The position numbers and the translations under genes are program-made. From the IMG/VR virus record IMGVR_UViG_3300049846_000628, positions 147,202 to 211,201 of that record: a DNA stretch of 64,000 bases; one strand, given 5' to 3'. The notes below the pieces were generated by a model. The model was given only the letters and a program-made list of their open reading frames with translations, did not search any database and was not told the origin of the DNA. This document shows positions 2,257 through 36,451 of the stretch, in pieces; within the stretch, counting starts at the first letter, position 1; each line of letters starts with the position of its first letter.

Positions 2257-2619
2257 TTATGATATTCTTTTTCTTTTAGAAGTATCTATATTTCTTTTTT
2301 GTTGGTATCGTGTAAGTGCCCCTGATGTAGTTATAAACCCAGTTTCAAGACACATCCATTTTTGAGAATTAGTTATTTTTGAACCTTGTTTTCCAGCATT
2401 TTTTCTTATATTATAAAGTTCTTCTGTTGATAAAGCAAAAAATCCAACACCTTTTTCATAAGATGTTTTTCCTCCTATTTTTCCACCAGGAAGAAAAGAA
2501 TGTTTATGAACTACCATTTTTCCTTCAAGTTCAAGAAAATCAATCAGTATTCTATCACACTCATAAAATTCTTTGAGGTATTGTGATACTTTTACATAAT
2601 CTATGTGTTTATCAATCAT
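2257..2619 (-). pseudogene. homing-endonuclease-like C-terminal DNA-binding remnant, no nuclease motif seen
   Basis: GGKIGGK...KWMCLETGFITTSGALTRYQQKRNIDTSKRKRI resembles C-termini of phage free-standing endonucleases; AT-rich; likely ATG at 2619. Confidence 0.5.
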
Positions 2620-17187: not shown

Positions 17188-17727
17188 CTATGCTTTATTT
17201 ATTATTCTTCCCAATTTATAATCTTTACCCGGACACTCTTTTGAAAACTTACATTCTACTCCATTATTCCACCATTTTTTGCCCCAAGAAGGATTCTTTT
17301 CCTTTGACATAATACCCACCATAACAGCACTCACACTCTCCCTCCATTTATCACTTGCCTTTCTTTTCTTTGCTGCTTTACTCAATGCTTTTCTATGTGC
17401 CTCACTTTTCTTTCTGCCTTTATGTGCCTCACTTAACTTCCTTTTAGTTTCCTCACTCAAAACCCTACCGGCACATCCTTCACCACCATCAGTCATATTT
17501 CTCAAAATACCTGTACCTAAATCTTTTCTACCAAGCACGGCAATCATATAAACCTCGTGCTTTCGTGCTTCTTCGTCTGTAAGGTTTTGCTTTAAGAATA
17601 TTCTTCTATCTTCTTCTGGGGGCAGATGTATTGCGTGCAGTTTATTGTTAATTCTACCTGCCTTTCCCTTACCAATGTAGTATGGAGTTCCATCTTCACG
17701 CAAGTAAGCGTAAGTATAATAATTCAT
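17188..17727 (-). mobile_element. free-standing GIY-YIG homing endonuclease with NUMOD3-like repeats
   Basis: YYTYAYLREDGTPYYIGKG motif; LSEETKRKLSEAHKG / KSEAHRKALS repeats. Confidence 0.85.
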
Positions 17728-17729
17728 TC

Positions 17730-17813
17730 TGCTTTAATCGTGGTTATGAATATTTATATGAGAAAAGGAGCATTTCTGCTCCTACTCTTTGCTTAAACAA
17801 CCACGATTAAGCA
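17730..17813 (-). promoter_or_regulatory. translation-sequestering inverted repeat enclosing a terminator and a late promoter TATAAATA
   Basis: Arms 17730-17745 and 17799-17813 (12-bp perfect core TTAATCGTGGTT); TATAAATA at 17751-17758. Confidence 0.7.
17763..17782 (-). terminator. intrinsic terminator GGAGCA-GAAA-TGCTCC-TTTT
   Basis: 6-bp stem, GNRA loop, U tract. Confidence 0.65.
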
Positions 17814-17820
17814 CTAATAT

Positions 17821-29675: not shown

Positions 29676-30335
29676 ATGAGTGAATATTATACATATGCCT
29701 ATTTGCAAAATAATGGGTTTCCATATTATATTGGAAAAGGCAAAGGAAATAGATTATATGATCATAGAGGTAAAAATTGCAATCCACCAAAAGATAAAAG
29801 TAGAATAATAAAATTAAAACAAAATATAACTGAAGAAGAAGCGTTTAAGCACGAAATTTATATGATTGCTTTATTTGGAAAAAAATGTGATAATACAGGC
29901 ATTTTAATGAATATTGCAGATGGTGGAAATGCTCCTCCAACATACTATGGAGAAGATAGTCCAACAAAAAGGTCTGAAGTTAGAGCAAAAATTGGTGCTG
30001 CAAATAAAGTAAGTTTGAAGGGAAGAAAAATTCCAGAAGAGGTAAGAAAAAAGCAATCAAATACTTGGAAAGAGAAATTAAAAAATAATCCAAGACCAAT
30101 ATCATATTATACTGAAAATTTAAAAAAAATGGCAGAAAGAAATCGTAATGATAAAAAAAAGCATAGAAAACATAGTGAAATGATGAAAGGCAGACCAAGT
30201 GCCAATAGAAAACCTGTCATTTATGATAGAAAAATATATGCATCTATGACTGAAGCCATAGAAAAGACAAAACTATCTCGTTATCTTATCTTAAAAAATG
30301 GTGGAATGTTCCTTAATAAAGAAGATATCAAATAA
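29676..30335 (+). mobile_element. free-standing GIY-YIG homing endonuclease
   Basis: YYTYAYLQNNGFPYYIGKGKGNR; basic NUMOD-like tail; very AT-rich; sits between gp4 and gp2. Confidence 0.85.
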
Positions 30336-32412: not shown

Positions 32413-32988
32413 ATTTAAGTTCTTATCAAAGATCATTACATATCGGTGCTTGCGGGAGCGTTCTTTCCACTCTCCTTCAGCACCTTTTACTTTTCCGCGA
32501 GAGTGTTTAGTTCCGTCTGCAAAGTAGAAATCTTTTTTTGGATCTGTGAGACCTGCATACTTAAAGTTACAAGCCCGATAGATTGTACCACTATGCAAAC
32601 TGCTATCAGCATAAGATATAATTGCTGATACTTTTGTGTCCTTCCGAAACTGTTTAATCGCTTTTGCAACGAACCAAGAAGTAATGTTGTACTCTTGTGA
32701 CTGGACATCTGGATGGATACAAAGTCTGGAGAGTTCAAAGAGTCCTTGTTGTTCATTTCTTTCTAACCCAAACGCTCCTTGTGCTATTTCTGGAACAGGG
32801 AGTCCAGTAAAAATACAAACTCCCTGGATACCACCTATATTTAACGGACAGAACTCATTTTTCTTGAAAAGACCGTAGTTATATCCTGATTTAAAATCTT
32901 TTGAAATATCTTTGAGATAATGAAACCGCAGAAGTAACTCTGCGGCTTCGGATTTACTTACACGGTCAATGTAGTAATCGGATTTCAC
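32398..32988 (-). CDS. mom: Mom-like GNAT-fold DNA modification protein
   Basis: HYL...GVCIF...LFELSRLC...SWFVAKAIK...IISYADS..H.GTIYRACNF pattern of the phage Mu Mom family. Confidence 0.75.
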   Translation of the reverse strand: MKSDYYIDRVSKSEAAELLLRFHYLKDISKDFKSGYNYGLFKKNEFCPLNIGGIQGVCIFTGLPVPEIAQGAFGLERNEQQGLFELSRLCIHPDVQSQEYNITSWFVAKAIKQFRKDTKVSAIISYADSSLHSGTIYRACNFKYAGLTDPKKDFYFADGTKHSRGKVKGAEGEWKERSRKHRYVMIFDKNLNLKWV

Positions 32989-33908
32989 TCCTCAGCAAGA
33001 CGTGCGAAATAACTGAGTGCATCATCATCTTCATCCTCTTCTACTGCCGCAGCACGGCGGGTAGGTTGAAGATTGTTGAGTTCAGTGCGAAGATCTTCAT
33101 CAAGATCTTTCACAGGACCACGGGTGTTATCCTCATCAAACTCTTCAGGATCCTGATAACGGGGAGTACCTTTATTACCCAGCACATAGTCCAGACGCTT
33201 TTTCAGTTCATCATAAGATTTGAACTGATCAGCAGCAATATGCTCAGCAAGAGAATATTGCTTACGCCATACTGCTTCCAGAGCCTCATCATCGTCTAGA
33301 AGAGGAGAAGGATTAGCAAACTCACTGGAATCATAGTTACGATAACCAGCAACGTTCTTCGCCTTCAGTTTGAAGTTAGCACCCTTCCAGAAGTCAAAGG
33401 GATCAATTGCTTCCTCATCTTCAAACTCAGGTTGCATTGCAGCAGTGAGTTTATCAAAGATCTTCTTACCATACTTGAACAGGAAGACCTTACCTTCGTT
33501 TGCAGGATTAGCAGGATCCTTCACCACATAGATGTTGGACACATAGGTGAGTTTACGCTTCTGCTTACGGGCAAGTTCTTTACCAGCATCAGTACCGTTG
33601 TTCCACAGTTCGGAGTTCAGTTCCGACACGGGATCCTTCTGACCCAGAGTAGTCAGAGAATTCTCAATATACCAACCACCAGGACCTTGGAATGCGTGAC
33701 TGTAGAGTTTCACGAAGGGCAGGTCTTCACCTTCGGGAGCGGGAAGGAAACGGATAACGGCATAACCATTGCCGCTTTTATCTACATCCAGTTTCCACAG
33801 ACGGTCATCACTAGAACCGCTGTTAGTATTCATTTTTTCAACTTCCTTGACCAGTTTGGCGGTCAGGGAACCAAGTTTAGACTGTTTCTTAAGATCGGCA
33901 AAGCCCAT
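32985..33908 (-). CDS. gp32: single-stranded DNA-binding protein
   Basis: DDRLWKLDVDKSGNGYAVIRFLP...HAFQGPGGWYIENSLTT...GANFKLK...acidic C-terminus SYFARLAEE. Confidence 0.97.
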   Translation of the reverse strand: MGFADLKKQSKLGSLTAKLVKEVEKMNTNSGSSDDRLWKLDVDKSGNGYAVIRFLPAPEGEDLPFVKLYSHAFQGPGGWYIENSLTTLGQKDPVSELNSELWNNGTDAGKELARKQKRKLTYVSNIYVVKDPANPANEGKVFLFKYGKKIFDKLTAAMQPEFEDEEAIDPFDFWKGANFKLKAKNVAGYRNYDSSEFANPSPLLDDDEALEAVWRKQYSLAEHIAADQFKSYDELKKRLDYVLGNKGTPRYQDPEEFDEDNTRGPVKDLDEDLRTELNNLQPTRRAAAVEEDEDDDALSYFARLAEE

Positions 33909-33950: not shown

Positions 33951-33979
33951 AGTATAACAGGGTTTCTCTCAGCGGTCAA
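33951..33979 (-). promoter_or_regulatory. sigma70 promoter TTGACC-17-TATACT for gene 32
   Basis: Consensus hexamers with 17-nt spacer. Confidence 0.75.
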
Positions 33980-34301
33980 TGTATTGCTTGAGAGATTCAA
34001 TCGTCTTGTTCATACTACTGAATAAAACTTGCATATCAGTCTCTGGTGGGAAACCCATCAGGGCAACTGACTTGCGTAGGTTCTCTTTCATTTCAACCGC
34101 TTGAGGGTCGTCTGAAAGGGATAACCTAGTATACATCACTCTCTGCTTTTCTAGCAAGAGCTCAAGTTTCTCAATGTGTTTCAATTTGGTCTCACGGGGC
34201 ATTCCACCGAAAGTTAAAATACTTCCGTAGATTTCTTCTTGTAACTTATTAATTTCTTTCAGTTCTTCCTGAATGATATCTGAGTCAAAAAAGTTACTCA
34301 T
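33969..34301 (-). CDS. conserved cyanophage protein upstream of gene 32
   Basis: MSNFFDSDIIQEEL...QRVMYTRLSLSDDP; recalled from cyanomyoviruses. Confidence 0.75.
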   Translation of the reverse strand: MSNFFDSDIIQEELKEINKLQEEIYGSILTFGGMPRETKLKHIEKLELLLEKQRVMYTRLSLSDDPQAVEMKENLRKSVALMGFPPETDMQVLFSSMNKTIESLKQYIDR

Positions 34302-34353
34302 CTATGATTTCCCGTAAAATTTTCTTATAATTGAACACATCAATATTTAGAAA
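34294..34353 (-). pseudogene. stranded original 3' end of gene 59 (FLNIDVFNYKKILREIIDE*)
   Basis: Manual translation; 10/18 identical to the present gp59 tail; stop overlaps ATG of the next gene. Confidence 0.8.
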
Positions 34354-34652
34354 CTGTTTTTTATCCTTTGTTTTCTTTCTCTTGCCCGTTTTTTACGGGT
34401 TTCCCTATCTTTATTATTTTCCCAATACCTCTTTTTTTCTCTAGCCCGTCTAGCTAAAACTTGTTCTTCAGTTAATCCCTTTGCCCACCTTTTCTTTTCA
34501 TAATCTGGATTTTTTTCTCTCCATTTTTGACGAGATTGTTCTCTTTGAACTTCTCTAGATGGAAATTTTTCAGAATCTGTAATTGATATGTCTTCTATAA
34601 AGTCAGGACCATCAATATTAAGGGCACGGTTAATACCTGATACATTTAACAT
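34347..34652 (-). mobile_element. basic 101-aa ORF of an insert in gene 59; no nuclease motif
   Basis: Arg/Lys-rich C-half; lies between new and old gene 59 tails; own promoters. Confidence 0.65.
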
Positions 34653-34661
34653 ATTCTTTTA

Positions 34662-34737
34662 GTAGGGGTAATACTATTTATATTGTAAAGGCGGGACTTA
34701 CACAAGTCAAATACCCCTACCCGACTTTGCTGCCCGC
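34662..34737 (-). promoter_or_regulatory. insert control region: TTGACT-17-TACAAT, overlapping late TATAAATA, nested inverted repeats
   Basis: -35 at 34705-34710, -10 at 34682-34687, TATAAATA 34675-34682, GTAGGGGTA/TACCCCTAC arms 34662-34670 and 34712-34720, plus GGCGGG/CCCGCC. Confidence 0.7.
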
Positions 34738-34740
34738 CAA

Positions 34741-35337
34741 TTATAAAATTATTTCTTTGAGTATTTTTTTATAACTAGAAATATCTACTTGAATGAAAGG
34801 AGAATACTTCTTAATCTTTAAGGAAACACACTCCCACACTGGGTCCAAAAGTTTCTTATCAAAATCTACGGAGAAACGGAATATTTTTTCGTAGATTGTT
34901 AAAGTTTCTAGCGATAACTGCCCGCTTAGAAACTTTTTGAGGACTATTGGATGCCCCTTTGAACAATTCAAAGCATCCTCTAATTTTGTCCCCAAGAACA
35001 ATTCGCTGCTTTGTTCTTTGAATAAGTAACTCAAACTCTGTTGTCTTCGCATCCACTCTGAGTATGTTCTTTCTCCAGAATTGATAATTTCTCCAATCCA
35101 TAAGTTCTGTGGGTTATCTGCTGATACAAAGTTTGATACTAGAAAATCTATAATTTCTTTATCTGAAAATTTGCGACTTGTGCGTTCGAAAAAATATTTA
35201 TCTTTGCGTCGATTAAACGAAGTCATACTCGCACGAGTCTTCGCACCATACTTAAAGAAGTCGTATTTGGGGTTTGTGAAATGATTTTTTAAAGACAAAT
35301 AATGTTGATAGGTTTCAAAGGGTGTCACTTTCAGCAT
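34741..35337 (-). CDS. gp59: helicase loader
   Basis: YLSLKNHFTNPKYDFFKYG...FNRRKDKYFFE...FLVSNFV...WIG. Confidence 0.9.
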   Translation of the reverse strand: MLKVTPFETYQHYLSLKNHFTNPKYDFFKYGAKTRASMTSFNRRKDKYFFERTSRKFSDKEIIDFLVSNFVSADNPQNLWIGEIINSGERTYSEWMRRQQSLSYLFKEQSSELFLGTKLEDALNCSKGHPIVLKKFLSGQLSLETLTIYEKIFRFSVDFDKKLLDPVWECVSLKIKKYSPFIQVDISSYKKILKEIIL

Positions 35338-35524
35338 CTACAAATCCAGCAAATTCAATATCTTCAATACAATCAACTGTGACTTGGTGTTCACCAATAC
35401 GATACCAGTGTTGATTGAGACCCAAAGTATCTGGATAATAACCAAGATATTCTAAGTCATTCGATTTATTTTCACGCAACCAAGCTTGAAGGCGATGGTG
35501 CATTAGTTCATCACGAGAAATCAT
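35315..35524 (-). CDS. hypothetical protein
   Basis: ORF track; between gp33 and gp59. Confidence 0.6.
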   Translation of the reverse strand: MISRDELMHHRLQAWLRENKSNDLEYLGYYPDTLGLNQHWYRIGEHQVTVDCIEDIEFAGFVDAESDTL

Positions 35525-35781
35525 AGGGGCAACTTCGCACGCGATGTTTTCTTCATAAAGTTAAGACGAATAGCGTCCCACTTTAACCGTTCCTTTAAAG
35601 GTTTTGAAATGAGTTTTGTTACTGATTCTACTTCAAGATTATTGATTTCGCAATAATGAACAATCGCATCAATATAATTGAGGTTTTCTTCAACAACAAT
35701 CTTTTCAATCTCAAGAGCAAACTTGGAAGGAGTTAGAAACTTGTTCTCAATAACTTGTTCTAGTTCTTTATTCGTTTCCAT
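35521..35781 (-). CDS. gp33: late transcription coactivator
   Basis: FALEIEKIV...YIDAIVHYCE...ISKPLKERLKWDAIRLNFMK; ATG at 35781. Confidence 0.85.
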   Translation of the reverse strand: METNKELEQVIENKFLTPSKFALEIEKIVVEENLNYIDAIVHYCEINNLEVESVTKLISKPLKERLKWDAIRLNFMKKTSRAKLPL

Positions 35782-36451
35782 AGAGTTCCAGTTTATCTCT
35801 AACAAACTTTCTAATGTATTCTGTGAGAAGTTTGATGTATTTTGATTTGTTTCGTTCTTCATAGACGACGCATTCTCCATTTTCACAAGCCATAATGATT
35901 ACAAGTTTTTTGACTGAAATACCAGTCAGTTCGTATAGCATACATCCGTAAGCCATACATTGAACAAAATAATGTTCGATCCACTCTCGTGGTTTTGGTT
36001 TTTTAGAAGTCTTAAAGTCGATTATTGCTAGTTCACCATCGTATTCGGCAATGCAGTCAACAGTTCCAGCAATGCCTAGTTGTTTACTATATAAAGACCC
36101 TTCAAGGGCGTAAATATTATTTATACGATTTAAATCTGTCTTTGCAATCTTAAACAGAAAGTCAGATATTGGTTGAACGGGGGGCAGATTTTTATTGTAA
36201 AGATAATTCTCTACAAGAGTATGCATATCAGTTCCACGACTTGTTGCCGCTTTTGTGATACGCTCTGCCTCTTCATTCCCAACTTTCTTTCTCCAATTAA
36301 CAAAAATTTCTTTATTAAAATGACTGGTCACCGAAGTGATGGAGACCAGTCGGAGAAGTTCTTCTTCTGTGGGAACTTTGTAATACCTTACACCATCAAT
36401 AGTCTCCCTTTCAAGGTCGGGGAGGTCAATATCAATATGTTTGAACATCAA
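35768..36451 (-). CDS. PD-(D/E)xK exonuclease (RecB/Cas4-like phage family)
   Basis: RGTDMH...E..LYS..LGIAGTVDCIAE...IIDFKTS...QCMAY. Confidence 0.85.
   Translation of the reverse strand: MMFKHIDIDLPDLERETIDGVRYYKVPTEEELLRLVSITSVTSHFNKEIFVNWRKKVGNEEAERITKAATSRGTDMHTLVENYLYNKNLPPVQPISDFLFKIAKTDLNRINNIYALEGSLYSKQLGIAGTVDCIAEYDGELAIIDFKTSKKPKPREWIEHYFVQCMAYGCMLYELTGISVKKLVIIMACENGECVVYEERNKSKYIKLLTEYIRKFVRDKLELYGNE

What the first reader, a model, noticed from the sequence alone, without database searches (positions are those of the whole stretch)
34294..34797. Mobile insert in gene 59 that carries a recoded replacement C-terminus and a nuclease-less ORF
Seen: gp59 now ends FIQVDISSYKKILKEIIL* (34741-34797). 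Exactly 444 nt downstream and in the same frame lies FLNIDVFNYKKILREIIDE* (34294-34353), whose stop still overlaps the next gene's ATG. The two tails share 10/18 residues, but none of the shared residues except D, one K and E use the same codon, so this is not a fresh target-site duplication. Between them are a promoter/hairpin block and a 101-aa Arg/Lys-rich ORF with no GIY-YIG, HNH or transposase motif. Inference: an element that invades an essential gene without splicing by repairing it with a divergent, possibly cleavage-immune allele. It is either a non-autonomous passenger of the other endonucleases or an unrecognised mobile family.
Basis: partly seen in the sequence, partly recalled or inferred. 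Interest (0 to 1): 0.8.

Follow-up and report, generated by a model that had tools for sequence, protein, structure and literature searches.

The report
Decayed homing-endonuclease cassette in gp59
A selfish DNA cassette related to phage T4's SegG homing endonuclease sits inside the end of the helicase-loader gene gp59 of a freshwater cyanophage, brings its own replacement gene end, and here has lost its DNA-cutting domain while keeping a conserved DNA-binding protein.

Summary
gp59 (34741-35337, minus strand) ends in a replacement tail. 444 nt downstream lies the native tail (34294-34353), whose stop still overlaps the DUF1825 start. In 74 related "empty" loci gp59 runs straight into DUF1825 with that native tail. 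All 24 "filled" loci of that set carry a distinct replacement tail, an insert and a relic.

The insert is not a new mobile family. ORF101 matches the C-terminal half of a 177-aa protein found at the same site in other phages. The N-terminal domain of that protein resembles T4 SegG, which occupies the same 59|32 slot in T4. Full-length, internally deleted and ORF-less forms all occur at this site.

The cassette is patchy on the backbone tree. In one pair it is far younger than its flanks (dS 0.20 against 1.1-2.0). A filled/empty pair shows a sharp right junction and about 420 nt of co-converted gp59.

The architecture matches the C-terminus-replacing endonuclease ORFs of fungal mitochondria.

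Two points are unusual:
- The nuclease-less ORF is under purifying selection (dN/dS 0.1-0.2).
- The 88-nt hairpin/late-promoter leader has a 41-nt invariant core that also precedes unrelated GIY-YIG and HNH endonuclease genes.

No cleavage, binding or transcript mapping was tested.

The parts
34741..35337 (-). gp59 (helicase loader), 198 aa, in the 'filled' allele
   Evidence: Pfam T4_Gp59_N, E 4e-15. 77% aa identity to S-SRM01 gp59.
34798..34860 (-). 3' part of the gp59 body that travels with the cassette (co-conversion tract; boundary approximate)
   Evidence: Identity between the window and L067/L021 rises from about 60-89% to 93-100% at about 34860. In the L009/L079 pair the converted tract is about 420 nt. 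In DNA run X9 a loose end (sequence unlike the window) is reported at 34863; whether it belongs to the contig laid at 34834-35043 is unclear.
34741..34797 (-). Replacement C-terminus of gp59, FIQVDISSYKKILKEIIL plus stop
   Evidence: All 24 filled loci carry the ...PF[LI]Q[VI]D...EII[LS]* type and none of the 74 empty ones does. It resembles the native tail of the S-SCSM1 lineage, FLNIDIFKYKKILKEIVL*.
34653..34740 (-). Regulatory leader of the cassette: hairpin plus promoters plus 5' UTR
   Evidence: 41 nt are invariant in 20 distinct copies. An exact 23-mer occurs in 44 IMG/VR loci, upstream of five or more unrelated ORF types. No Rfam family matched.
34690..34738 (-). Hairpin (GGCGGG...CCCGCC base) whose 3' arm holds the -35-like TTGACT (34705-34710)
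   Evidence: -22.2 kcal/mol. The basal stem has 4 of 6 pairs with compensatory changes, 93% of cells paired, and 0/500 shuffles reach the covariation score.
34712..34720 (-). GTAGGGGTA in the hairpin loop, complementary to 34662-34670
   Evidence: A 9-bp duplex of -14.4 kcal/mol. Both arms are invariant, so covariation gives no test.
34675..34682 (-). TATAAATA, the T4-type late promoter motif. It overlaps the last base of the -10-like TACAAT (34682-34687).
   Evidence: TAAATA is invariant in all 20 copies. The same motif lies between inverted-repeat arms upstream of P0009 and of the window endonuclease gene at 17727.
34662..34670 (-). TACCCCTAC, 3' partner of the loop. It ends 9 nt before the ATG.
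   Evidence: The arrangement resembles the T4 I-TevI, segB and mobE leaders (PMC2988022).
34347..34652 (-). ORF101, the nuclease-less cargo: a 22-aa N-terminal peptide (34587-34652) plus a basic helical domain (34350-34583) homologous to the C-terminal domain of the full-length endonuclease
   Evidence: 66% identity to P0009 residues 88-175. Eight further relatives besides the window's own protein (P0001), all between gp59 and DUF1825. dN/dS is 0.1-0.2 in the pairs with enough divergence (dS at least 0.15). The model is helical, with a low-confidence N-terminus. An RNA-library contig covers 34444-34658.
34294..34353 (-). Relic of the native gp59 C-terminus, FLNIDVFNYKKILREIIDE plus stop. It also carries the ORF101 stop and the DUF1825 start region.
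   Evidence: 19/19 aa identical to the tails of L025 and L060. A relic is present in every filled locus and is decayed in L005, L021 and L121. An empty-allele contig in run X9 joins ...KYSP directly to 34353.
33969..34301 (-). DUF1825 gene, the right-hand homology flank
   Evidence: Pfam DUF1825, E 2e-15. About 99% nt identity between filled L009 and empty L079 from the relic onward.

Best explanation
The region 34354 to about 34860 is a free-standing homing-endonuclease cassette of the T4 SegG-like (GIY-YIG) lineage. It is lodged between the codons for ...KYSP and FLNID... of gp59.

How it spreads (inferred). A full-length endonuclease of this lineage cuts the empty gp59/DUF1825 allele of a co-infecting phage. 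The break is repaired from the filled genome. The left homology arm is the gp59 body. The right arm is the donor's relic tail plus DUF1825. The recipient's own tail pairs with the donor's relic, so it ends up downstream as a new relic. The cassette then supplies a foreign, sequence-divergent tail that keeps gp59 whole and no longer resembles the target.

How it is expressed (inferred). The leader is a hairpin with a T4-type late promoter placed between two complementary segments. As in T4 I-TevI, segB and mobE, it probably keeps the ORF silent on read-through gp59 transcripts and lets it be translated from late transcripts.

State in this genome. The catalytic domain has been replaced by a 22-aa peptide, so the cassette cannot cut. 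It can only be copied when a full-length relative cuts (trans-homing) or by ordinary recombination. The retained DNA-binding protein is kept by selection. It most likely acts as a site-specific DNA binder, either a regulator or autorepressor or a binder of the homing site.

What is shown: the anatomy, the homology, the polymorphism, horizontal transfer, the co-conversion tracts and purifying selection. What is inferred: cleavage, immunity of the new tail, the regulatory logic and the role of ORF101.
For: - Empty alleles have gp59 overlapping DUF1825 by 8 nt.
- 24 filled loci and 74 empty loci show complete linkage of the replacement tail with the insert.
- Every filled locus keeps a relic, and the relic matches its own backbone. 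L245 keeps ...KEIVLGGA*, the tail type of its own divergent lineage.
- ORF101 is homologous to the C-terminal domain of P0009 (177 aa), which sits at the same site.
- The P0009 N-domain belongs to a family of 1196 representatives. NUMOD3 is found in 33 of 57 sampled members and TIGR01453 in 24 of 57.
- That domain aligns with T4 SegG at E 8e-5. Its model finds the GIY-YIG folds of UvrC, I-TevI and Slx1 as top Foldseek hits.
- T4 SegG lies in the same 59|32 slot (PMC2988022).
- A degeneration series occurs at this site: full length (L005, L245, L120), internally deleted (L121) and ORF-less scar (L104, L114).
- Filled loci are scattered on the backbone tree, needing 6 changes, at least 5 of them forced by supported branches.
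- Between the window and L068, dS is 0.20 for ORF101 against 2.0 for the gp59 body and 1.1 for gp32, with DUF1825 saturated.
- The L009/L079 pair shows a sharp right junction and about 420 nt of converted gp59.
- Filled and empty alleles co-occur in one DNA run.
- dN/dS of ORF101 is 0.1-0.2 in the pairs with enough divergence (dS at least 0.15).
- The leader is conserved and its stem covaries. The same architecture with different sequence precedes P0009 and the window endonuclease gene at 17727.
Against: - No nuclease activity, target site or DNA binding has been measured for any member.
- The GIY-YIG assignment of the P0009 N-domain is only moderate. Pfam GIY-YIG does not hit. The profile comparison with the N-domain alone against SegG gives E 0.003 and probability 11%. 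There is no match to I-TevI-type domains. All Foldseek E-values are 1 or higher.
- No SegG-like nuclease domain lies in this 64-kb window. A trans-acting partner in this genome is therefore unproven.
- Only the window/L068 pair gives a clear dS discordance. The other pairs fit vertical descent.
- Strong purifying selection on ORF101 and on its N-peptide is not expected of a merely decaying element.
- L103 keeps LNID in its working tail. The N-to-Q and I-to-V changes are therefore not obligatory.
Confidence: 0.78

Rival explanations
1. ORF101 is still the targeting subunit of an active, two-part homing system. Its conserved 22-aa N-terminal peptide recruits a catalytic partner made elsewhere, such as a stand-alone nuclease domain or a phage or host nuclease. 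On this view the cassette is autonomous in its genome.
For: - Purifying selection acts on both the peptide (dN/dS about 0.2-0.4) and the DNA-binding domain (0.04-0.16).
- The same kind of peptide (LN..L.I.GP.[YF]I.D) heads two or three other nuclease-less proteins with different HEG-type DNA-binding modules at the same site.
- The nuclease-less form spread recently into a divergent backbone.
- Short forms far outnumber full-length ones among the loci found.
Against: - No partner has been identified.
- No SegG-like domain lies in the window.
- The peptide is modelled with low confidence (pLDDT 50-60).
- No protein combining this peptide with a nuclease domain was found.
- I know of no precedent for a split free-standing homing endonuclease.
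Confidence: 0.1
2. No endonuclease was ever involved in placing this copy. A promoter/stem-loop (PeSL-type) cassette carrying a small ORF was shuffled into the gp59/DUF1825 junction by recombination at the conserved leader. ORF101 is an ordinary accessory ('moron') DNA-binding protein.
For: - The leader has the make-up of a PeSL: a stem-loop plus a sigma-70-like promoter (PMC2839356, PMC4122927).
- The same leader precedes many different cargos, and cargo differs behind an identical tail plus leader. The window and L021 are 96-100% identical up to the start codon and then diverge.
- L108 and L135 carry GIY-YIG and HNH genes in one slot behind the same leader.
Against: - Nearly all cargos behind this leader are homing endonucleases or their DNA-binding halves.
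- Full-length nucleases occur at this exact site in two very divergent backbones.
- Site specificity to one codon boundary and one-sided co-conversion tracts are the marks of break repair.
- The window holds only one copy of the leader. PeSLs are described as multi-copy within a genome.
Confidence: 0.09
3. The downstream tail is still used. A frameshift, read-through or RNA-level removal of the 447-nt in-frame insert restores or fuses the native tail.
For: - In the window, and in L009, L030 and L067, the insert is a multiple of 3 (447 or 438 nt).
- The window has A AAA AAC six bases before the ORF101 stop. A -1 slip there would read into the relic (sequence).
Against: - The ORF101 frame relative to the relic differs between loci (window against L009). 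The relic is out of frame in L005, L021 and L245 and truncated in L005, L021, L103 and L121.
- gp59 has its own complete, conserved tail and stop.
- No Rfam intron or ribozyme matched.
- No skipping joints were seen in RNA or DNA contigs.
- Being in frame twice by chance has odds of about 1 in 9.
Confidence: 0.02

Closest known systems
T4 SegG and the other free-standing Seg (GIY-YIG) homing endonucleases ('intronless homing')
   Same: - Same genomic slot: T4 has 59 - segG - 32 (PMC2988022 Table 1).
- The N-domain of the full-length relative aligns with SegG.
- Same orientation as the neighbouring genes.
- Presence/absence polymorphism.
- Co-conversion of flanking markers that extends hundreds of nt on one side. 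SegG acts from a distant cleavage site according to the title of Liu et al. 2003, listed in PMC3037559.
   Different: - T4 segG lies between intact genes and targets gene 32. This cassette lies inside the 3' end of gp59, replaces its last 18-19 codons and leaves a relic.
- This copy has no catalytic domain.
- T4 segG is described as lacking a promoter cassette of its own in the non-coding leader (PMC2988022). This one carries a dedicated, highly conserved leader.
Mobile endonuclease ORFs (mORFs) of fungal mitochondria that insert a foreign C-terminus: Allomyces macrogynus atp6; Glomus atp6, atp9, cox2, nad3
   Same: - Identical architecture: gene core, then an inserted foreign C-terminus in phase, then an endonuclease ORF, then the native C*-terminal relic.
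- The native relic is closer to relatives than the inserted copy is (PMC3630166). Here the figures are 82-93% against about 51% nt identity.
   Different: - A different host system (a T4-like cyanophage) and a different target gene (gp59).
- Whether the endonuclease is related to the mitochondrial ones was not examined here.
- The duplicated segment is very short (57-60 nt).
- The nuclease-less derivative is conserved.
- I know of no published phage example of this architecture; that statement rests on my own knowledge.
Defunct I-TevIII mobilised in trans by MobE in T4 (Wilson and Edgell 2009)
   Same: A homing-endonuclease gene that has lost activity can still be inherited preferentially when a nearby active endonuclease cuts the recipient (abstract of PMC2790892). 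This is a precedent for the non-autonomous spread proposed here.
   Different: In T4 the helper sits next to the defunct element in the same genome. Here no helper is seen in the window, so the cognate nuclease would have to come from another genome or from outside the 64 kb.
Late-promoter-in-hairpin control of T4 I-TevI, I-TevII, I-TevIII, segB and Aeh1 mobE; PeSL promoter/stem-loop cassettes of T4-type phages
   Same: - A late promoter lies between complementary segments just upstream of the start codon. Long transcripts could therefore fold while late ones could not (PMC2988022).
- Stem-loop plus sigma-70-like promoter, linked with modular exchange of the downstream ORF (PMC2839356, PMC4122927).
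   Different: - The upstream partner lies in the loop of a separate, covarying hairpin, giving a pseudoknot-like geometry.
- A 41-nt core is invariant across phages and across GIY-YIG, HNH and nuclease-less cargos.
- Only one copy lies in this 64-kb window.
- The PeSL paper consulted does not mention cyanophages.
Domesticated homing-endonuclease DNA-binding domains (the CapR domain of phage satellites, as discussed in PMC10448857)
   Same: A DNA-binding module of HEG type kept without a nuclease and used as a DNA-binding protein.
   Different: There is no sequence relation. CapR is a zinc-finger module. ORF101 is a basic helical module of the 'W/Y..N.EK' repeat kind, which is also attached to GIY-YIG and HNH nucleases. 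The function of ORF101 is unknown.

Membership tests
Free-standing GIY-YIG (Seg-type) homing endonuclease gene | Encodes a GIY-YIG catalytic domain | tested here: not met
   ORF101 has only a 22-aa peptide where relatives have the roughly 95-aa domain. For the full-length relative P0009 the assignment is probable but not firm: SegG E 8e-5, N-domain alone E 0.003, no Pfam hit, GIY-YIG folds on top of the Foldseek list with E of 1 or higher.
Free-standing GIY-YIG (Seg-type) homing endonuclease gene | C-terminal DNA-binding domain joined to the nuclease | tested here: met
   ORF101 residues about 24-101 are 66-70% identical to the C-terminal domain of P0009. The same repeat type is attached to GIY-YIG and HNH nucleases. 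DNA binding itself was not tested.
Free-standing GIY-YIG (Seg-type) homing endonuclease gene | Present or absent at one fixed site among close relatives, with flanking markers co-converted | tested here: met
   24 filled and 74 empty loci at the same codon boundary. Scattered on the tree. Conversion tract in L009/L079.
Free-standing GIY-YIG (Seg-type) homing endonuclease gene | Site-specific cleavage of the allele that lacks the gene, and resistance of the allele that has it | not testable with these tools
   Indirect only: the replacement tail scores 3 bits and the relic 28 bits against the empty-site matrix.
C-terminus-replacing mobile endonuclease ORF (mitochondrial mORF type) | An inserted C-terminus in phase with the gene core, followed by the mobile ORF, followed by the native C-terminal relic | tested here: met
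   Description of the type in PMC3630166.
C-terminus-replacing mobile endonuclease ORF (mitochondrial mORF type) | The native relic is closer to the relatives' genes than the inserted C-terminus is (foreign origin) | tested here: met
   The relic is 49/60 nt identical on average (up to 56/60) and the inserted tail 27.6/54. The inserted tail resembles the S-SCSM1-lineage tail.
C-terminus-replacing mobile endonuclease ORF (mitochondrial mORF type) | The mobile ORF encodes an active endonuclease | tested here: not met
   The catalytic domain is absent in the window copy. It is present in the relatives L005, L245 and L120. Activity was not tested.
PeSL (promoter-early stem-loop) regulatory cassette | A stem-loop joined to a sigma-70-like promoter | tested here: met
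   Hairpin 34690-34738 with a covarying base. TTGACT-17-TACAAT, 10 of 12 matches.
PeSL (promoter-early stem-loop) regulatory cassette | Many near-identical copies within one genome, concentrated in hyperplastic regions | tested here: not met
   One copy in the 64-kb window. The rest of the genome was not available.
Group I intron or intein in gp59 | A self-splicing RNA or protein element that restores the host gene product | tested here: not met
   No Rfam match. gp59 has its own stop. The insert is out of frame in other loci. No skipping joints in RNA contigs.

The most novel reading that the evidence does not exclude
The nuclease-less proteins at this site form a functional class of their own. 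Each has a conserved 22-30-aa N-terminal peptide joined to an interchangeable HEG-type DNA-binding module, and each is expressed from the shared endonuclease leader. They could be the targeting subunit of a split homing system that recruits a catalytic partner in trans. Alternatively they could be a nuclease-free competitive element that binds the rival phage's gp59/DUF1825 junction. Either way the cassette would still be selfish and active, not a decaying remnant.
Probability: 0.12. Interest if true: 0.85.

Novelty: new variant of a known kind. Interest (0 to 1): 0.55.

Why it matters
- It shows in a phage the trick known from fungal mitochondria. A homing element can live inside a replication gene without an intron or intein because it carries a spare gene end.
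- Public metagenomes already hold the empty, full, truncated and scar states of the cassette at one codon boundary. That gives a natural system for studying how homing endonuclease genes invade, decay and are reused.
- Two features could change how such elements are read. A nuclease-less derivative is kept by selection and still moves between backbones. A near-invariant leader is shared by unrelated endonuclease families, which suggests a portable expression and exchange module for selfish genes in cyanophages.
- For annotation, the last 18-40 codons of gp59 in these phages are of foreign origin. They should be left out of gp59 phylogenies.

Tried and rejected
Searches on ORF101 that gave nothing:
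- Pfam and PHROGs.
- tblastn against 50,697 phage records.
- Foldseek of its model against PDB.
- ESM Atlas, which gave only unnamed look-alikes scoring 0.87.

Searches on P0009:
- Pfam: no family.
- PDB sequence search with P0009, and with the family profile A1: nothing useful.
- PHROGs: only weak hits, homing-endonuclease phrog_314 at E 0.11.

Other negative results:
- Rfam on 34200-34900: only chance-level hits.
- A copy of the insert or its leader elsewhere in the window: none.
- A SegG-like nuclease domain in the window: none.
- Profile comparison of the P0009 N-domain with I-TevI-type GIY-YIG domains: no match.

Attempts that could not answer the question:
- I tried to learn whether the window's own 211-kb genome encodes a SegG-like domain elsewhere, using a degenerate DNA pattern. 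It did show that these genes cluster around gp59-DUF1825-gp32 in 37 of 117 loci.

Ideas rejected:
- Frameshift fusion of ORF101 to the relic: rejected because frames differ between loci.
- Codons 11-15 of ORF101 (CTTAATATTGATGG) as a copy of the target core (CTAAATATTGATGT) serving as an operator: not significant, since 139 of 1000 shuffles score as well.

Weak evidence not relied on:
- RNAfold alone does not make the long-range loop/5'-UTR pairing the best fold (-22.1 against -25.8 kcal/mol). The pseudoknot could not be scored.
- All RNA-level evidence comes from Logan contigs of metatranscriptome runs. These carry no strand information and cannot exclude contaminating DNA.
Full report
**Setting.** All genes here lie on the minus strand. 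In transcription order they are:
- gp33 (35521-35886)
- a 69-aa ORF (35315-35524)
- gp59 (34741-35337, 198 aa)
- an 88-nt non-coding block (34653-34740)
- ORF101 (34347-34652)
- a 60-nt stretch (34294-34353)
- DUF1825 (33969-34301)
- gp32 (32985-33908)

The phage is a T4-like cyanomyovirus with no close relative among 50,697 deposited phage genomes. The best gp59 match is S-SRM01, a freshwater Synechococcus phage, at 77% aa identity. Near-identical DNA stands in freshwater, drinking-water and sediment metagenomes.

**1. The observation.**
- gp59 ends ...PFIQVDISSYKKILKEIIL*.
- 444 nt downstream (447 nt stop to stop) and in the same frame lies FLNIDVFNYKKILREIIDE*.
- The TAA of that second tail overlaps the DUF1825 ATG by 8 nt (ATGAGTAA).
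- That overlap is exactly how intact gp59 meets DUF1825 in P-SSM2, S-SRM01 and S-SKS1.
- The tails share 10 of 18 residues. Four of these (D, Y, K, E), not three, use the same codon. Nucleotide identity is 30/54.

The downstream peptide is not a chance match. It is 19/19 identical to the working gp59 tails of L025 and L060 and up to 56/60 nt identical. Over 74 empty alleles the relic averages 49/60 nt identity, while the working tail of this window averages 27.6/54.

**2. Filled and empty alleles.** I fetched 80 IMG/VR loci with gp59 76-100% identical to the window's, plus loci found through ORF101 homologues. The pattern is clean.
- In 74 loci gp59 ends ...PF[LI]N[IT]D.F..KK.LR.I..E* (with minor variants) and overlaps DUF1825.
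- In 24 loci (this window included) an insert of 431-978 nt is present, and gp59 ends ...PF[LI]Q[VI]D...YKK.L[KR]EII[LS]*.
- No empty locus has the Q-type tail.
- Every filled locus keeps a relic of the native tail just before DUF1825.
- The relic follows the backbone, not the insert. In L245 and in L103/L105/L119/L127, which belong to a distant lineage (DUF1825 about 50% identical), it is of the ...VL.F.KILKEI[IV]LG..* type of that lineage.
- A DNA run (X9) holds both the filled form and a contig in which ...KYSP is joined directly to position 34353. The insertion point is therefore between 34354 and 34353.

**3. What the insert is.** ORF101 has nine relatives, its own cluster P0001 included, among 5.8 billion proteins. 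Every contig examined places them between gp59 and DUF1825.
- One relative, P0009 (177 aa), carries the ORF101-like domain at its C-terminus (66-70% identity). Its N-terminus is a 95-aa domain reading YHYTYYSYEEWG.GYFGSRSCDC...YFGS...KPTHKIIL...E...NPHFAN.
- That domain defines a large family: 1196 representatives at E up to 0.001.
- Members of the family usually continue into NUMOD3 repeats (33 of 57). 24 of 57 hit TIGR01453, 'group I intron endonuclease'.
- The family profile aligns with T4 SegG over the YIGS / KP..KII / E / NP.[YF]FN motifs, at E 8e-5 and probability 61%. With the N-domain alone the figures are E 0.003 and 11%.
- An AlphaFold model (pLDDT 90) finds UvrC, I-TevI, Slx1 and UPF0213 GIY-YIG domains as its best PDB matches. 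The scores are weak: E of 1 or higher, TM up to 0.52 on the target.
- Pfam GIY-YIG and I-TevI-type profiles do not match.

I therefore call the domain SegG-like and probably GIY-YIG, but not proven.

In T4 itself, segG lies between genes 59 and 32 (PMC2988022, Table 1). In 37 of 117 further loci with this domain the gene lies around gp59, DUF1825 or gp32. The examples checked sit upstream of gp59, between DUF1825 and gp32, or after gp32.

The K/R-rich 'W/Y..N.EK' helical repeats of ORF101 also occur fused to ordinary GIY-YIG and HNH nucleases. ORF101 is thus the DNA-binding half of a homing endonuclease. The catalytic domain is replaced by 22 residues, MLNVSGINRALNIDGPDFIEDI.

**4. A life cycle at one site.** The same codon boundary holds several states:
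- Full-length genes: L005-L008, L245 and L120.
- A gene with an internal deletion in the nuclease domain: L121.
- Nuclease-less forms of three kinds: the ORF101 type, and two peptide+NUMOD3+K-rich types as in L021/L109 and L105.
- Scars with only tail, leader fragment and relic: L104 and L114.

These states are documented. Relatives without the ORF that carry both tails do exist, but they still hold the leader, so they are decayed inserts rather than counter-examples.

**5. Mobility.**
- On a tree of gp59 body + DUF1825 + gp32, the six distinct filled backbones are scattered. Six changes are needed, as many as for shuffled labels, and at least five are forced by supported branches. Each filled locus has empty nearest relatives.
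- Loss by recombination between the two tails would leave chimeric tails, which were not seen. Repeated gain is therefore the simpler reading.
- Between the window and L068, dS is 0.20 for ORF101 against 2.0 for the gp59 body and 1.1 for gp32, with DUF1825 saturated.
- The sliding identity for that pair rises to 93-100% from about 34860, through the tail, leader and ORF, and falls at the relic.
- The full-length gene is 86% identical over 879 nt between L005 and L245, whose flanks barely align.
- In the closest filled/empty pair (L009/L079), the first 100 nt of gp59 and everything from the relic onward are 99-100% identical. The roughly 420 nt of gp59 before the insert are only about 85% identical.

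That last pattern, a sharp right junction with a long one-sided conversion tract, is what repair of a break from a filled template would give. For other pairs dS of the ORF is similar to that of the flanks, so much of the distribution is also vertical.

**6. The replacement tail.** It resembles native tails of another cyanophage lineage. S-SCSM1 has FLNIDIFKYKKILKEIVL*, and L067 has FLQVDIFKYKKILKEIIL*, which is 15 of 18 identical. The difference is N-I changed to Q-V/I in the best-conserved part of the empty site. Against a matrix built from 58 empty sites the relic scores 28.5 bits and the working junction 3.0 bits. This fits a foreign, target-destroying allele carried with the element, as in Allomyces atp6 and Glomus atp6/atp9/cox2/nad3 (PMC3630166). 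Immunity is not shown, and L103 keeps LNID.

**7. The leader.**
- An exact 23-mer from it occurs in 44 IMG/VR loci.
- 36 of these are at gp59 tails. Eight are elsewhere, in front of two other GIY-YIG types, an HNH gene and another nuclease-less NUMOD3 protein.
- In 20 distinct copies, 41 consecutive nt, the TAAATA of the late-promoter motif, and ACCCCTACTAAAAGAAT before the ATG are invariant or nearly so. This sample was selected through the 23-mer.
- The variable base of the hairpin shows compensatory changes in 4 of 6 pairs.
- The loop sequence GTAGGGGTA is complementary to TACCCCTAC, which ends 9 nt before the ATG. TATAAATA lies between them.
- P0009 and the window's own GIY-YIG gene at 17727 have unrelated sequences with the same layout: arm, inner hairpin, TATAAATA, arm, about 10 nt, ATG.

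This is the logic described for I-TevI, segB and mobE, where only late transcripts escape an inhibitory fold (PMC2988022). The composition also resembles PeSL cassettes (PMC2839356, PMC4122927). The window and L021 are 96-100% identical up to the start codon and then diverge into different cargos. L108 and L135 hold GIY-YIG and HNH genes in one slot behind the same leader. The leader therefore also marks a point of cargo exchange. No Rfam family matches.

**8. ORF101 is maintained.**
- Across seven distinct sequences, dN/dS is 0.09-0.22 in the pairs with enough divergence to estimate it (dS 0.15-0.89). For the peptide it is 0.10-0.39 and for the DNA-binding domain 0.04-0.20.
- The model is a set of basic helices with an uncertain N-terminus and no structural neighbour.
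- A contig of a metatranscriptome library covers 34444-34658 at 100% identity. Its depth is like that of gp59 and about a tenth of that over DUF1825. This is only weak evidence of expression.

**9. Conclusion.** The finding is a real, mobile, C-terminus-replacing homing-endonuclease cassette. It belongs to a known lineage (SegG-like) and has a known architecture (mitochondrial mORF type). In this genome it is in a nuclease-less state. It is non-autonomous for cleavage as far as the window shows.

Why its DNA-binding protein and N-terminal peptide are conserved is the open question. The leading ideas are a regulator or site binder, or, less likely, a targeting subunit for a partner nuclease.

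Noticed in passing
window 17203-17727 (-) and leader 17728-17815: A GIY-YIG + NUMOD3 endonuclease-like gene, 44-46% identical to the L108 and L005 genes. Its leader has the same layout as the gp59 cassette but a different sequence: taatcgtggtt, an inner hairpin, TATAAATA, then aaccacgatta about 8 nt before the ATG. The leader model gives a marginal hit (E 0.018).
   Followed up: partly
window 29682-30071 (+): A second GIY-YIG endonuclease-like ORF (46-55% identical over its N-terminal 100-147 residues to the same genes). TATAAATA lies about 35 nt upstream, with no obvious inverted repeat.
   Followed up: no
window about 2263-2487 (-): A stretch 50% identical to the C-terminal 44 residues of S-PM2p178 and 35% to the C-terminus of the L134 endonuclease. 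It may be another endonuclease DNA-binding remnant.
   Followed up: no
window 35315-35524 (-): A 69-aa ORF (phrog_2020) lies between gp33 and gp59. In S-SRM01, S-SKS1, L005 and L009, gp33 overlaps gp59 directly. This is a second insertion/deletion difference at gp59, on its upstream side.
   Followed up: no
L021 about 263-265 (IMGVR_UViG_3300006917_000567): gp59 of this filled locus has an in-frame TAA where relatives have Ser (...DFLV*NFV...). It could be a sequencing error, a pseudogene or a recoded stop; this was not resolved.
   Followed up: no
L085 3103-3259: A different, unrelated 156-nt insert at the gp59/DUF1825 junction, with gp59 ending ...KKILKEIISYGT*. The junction seems to be a general hot spot.
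   Followed up: no
window 34304: In metatranscriptome run X8 a contig over DUF1825 (depth 226, against about 24 over ORF101 and gp59) ends at 34304, 3 nt before the DUF1825 AUG, and continues into Illumina adapter sequence. This hints at a discrete RNA end inside the relic tail.
   Followed up: no
L108 2599-3272 and L135 6771-7338: The same genomic slot, with homologous flanking ORFs, holds a GIY-YIG/NUMOD3 gene in one phage and an HNH gene in another. Both lie behind the same conserved leader.
   Followed up: partly
window 34609-34622 against 34337-34350: Codons 11-15 of ORF101 (CTTAATATTGATGG, ...LNIDG...) match the relic/target core (CTAAATATTGATGT, ...LNIDV...) at 12 of 14 nt. The match is not significant in a matrix/shuffle test (139 of 1000).
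   Followed up: yes
L103 about 300-480: One filled locus keeps LNID (FLNIDVLKYKKILKEIVL*) in the working gp59 tail upstream of the leader. It is the only exception seen to the Q-type replacement tail.
   Followed up: partly
L099 2495-3124 (S-PM2p178): The unnamed ORF next to the characterised endonuclease F-CphI, between psbA and psbD of S-PM2, has the same SegG-like N-domain (58% identical to P0009). That locus therefore appears to hold two endonuclease genes side by side.
   Followed up: no
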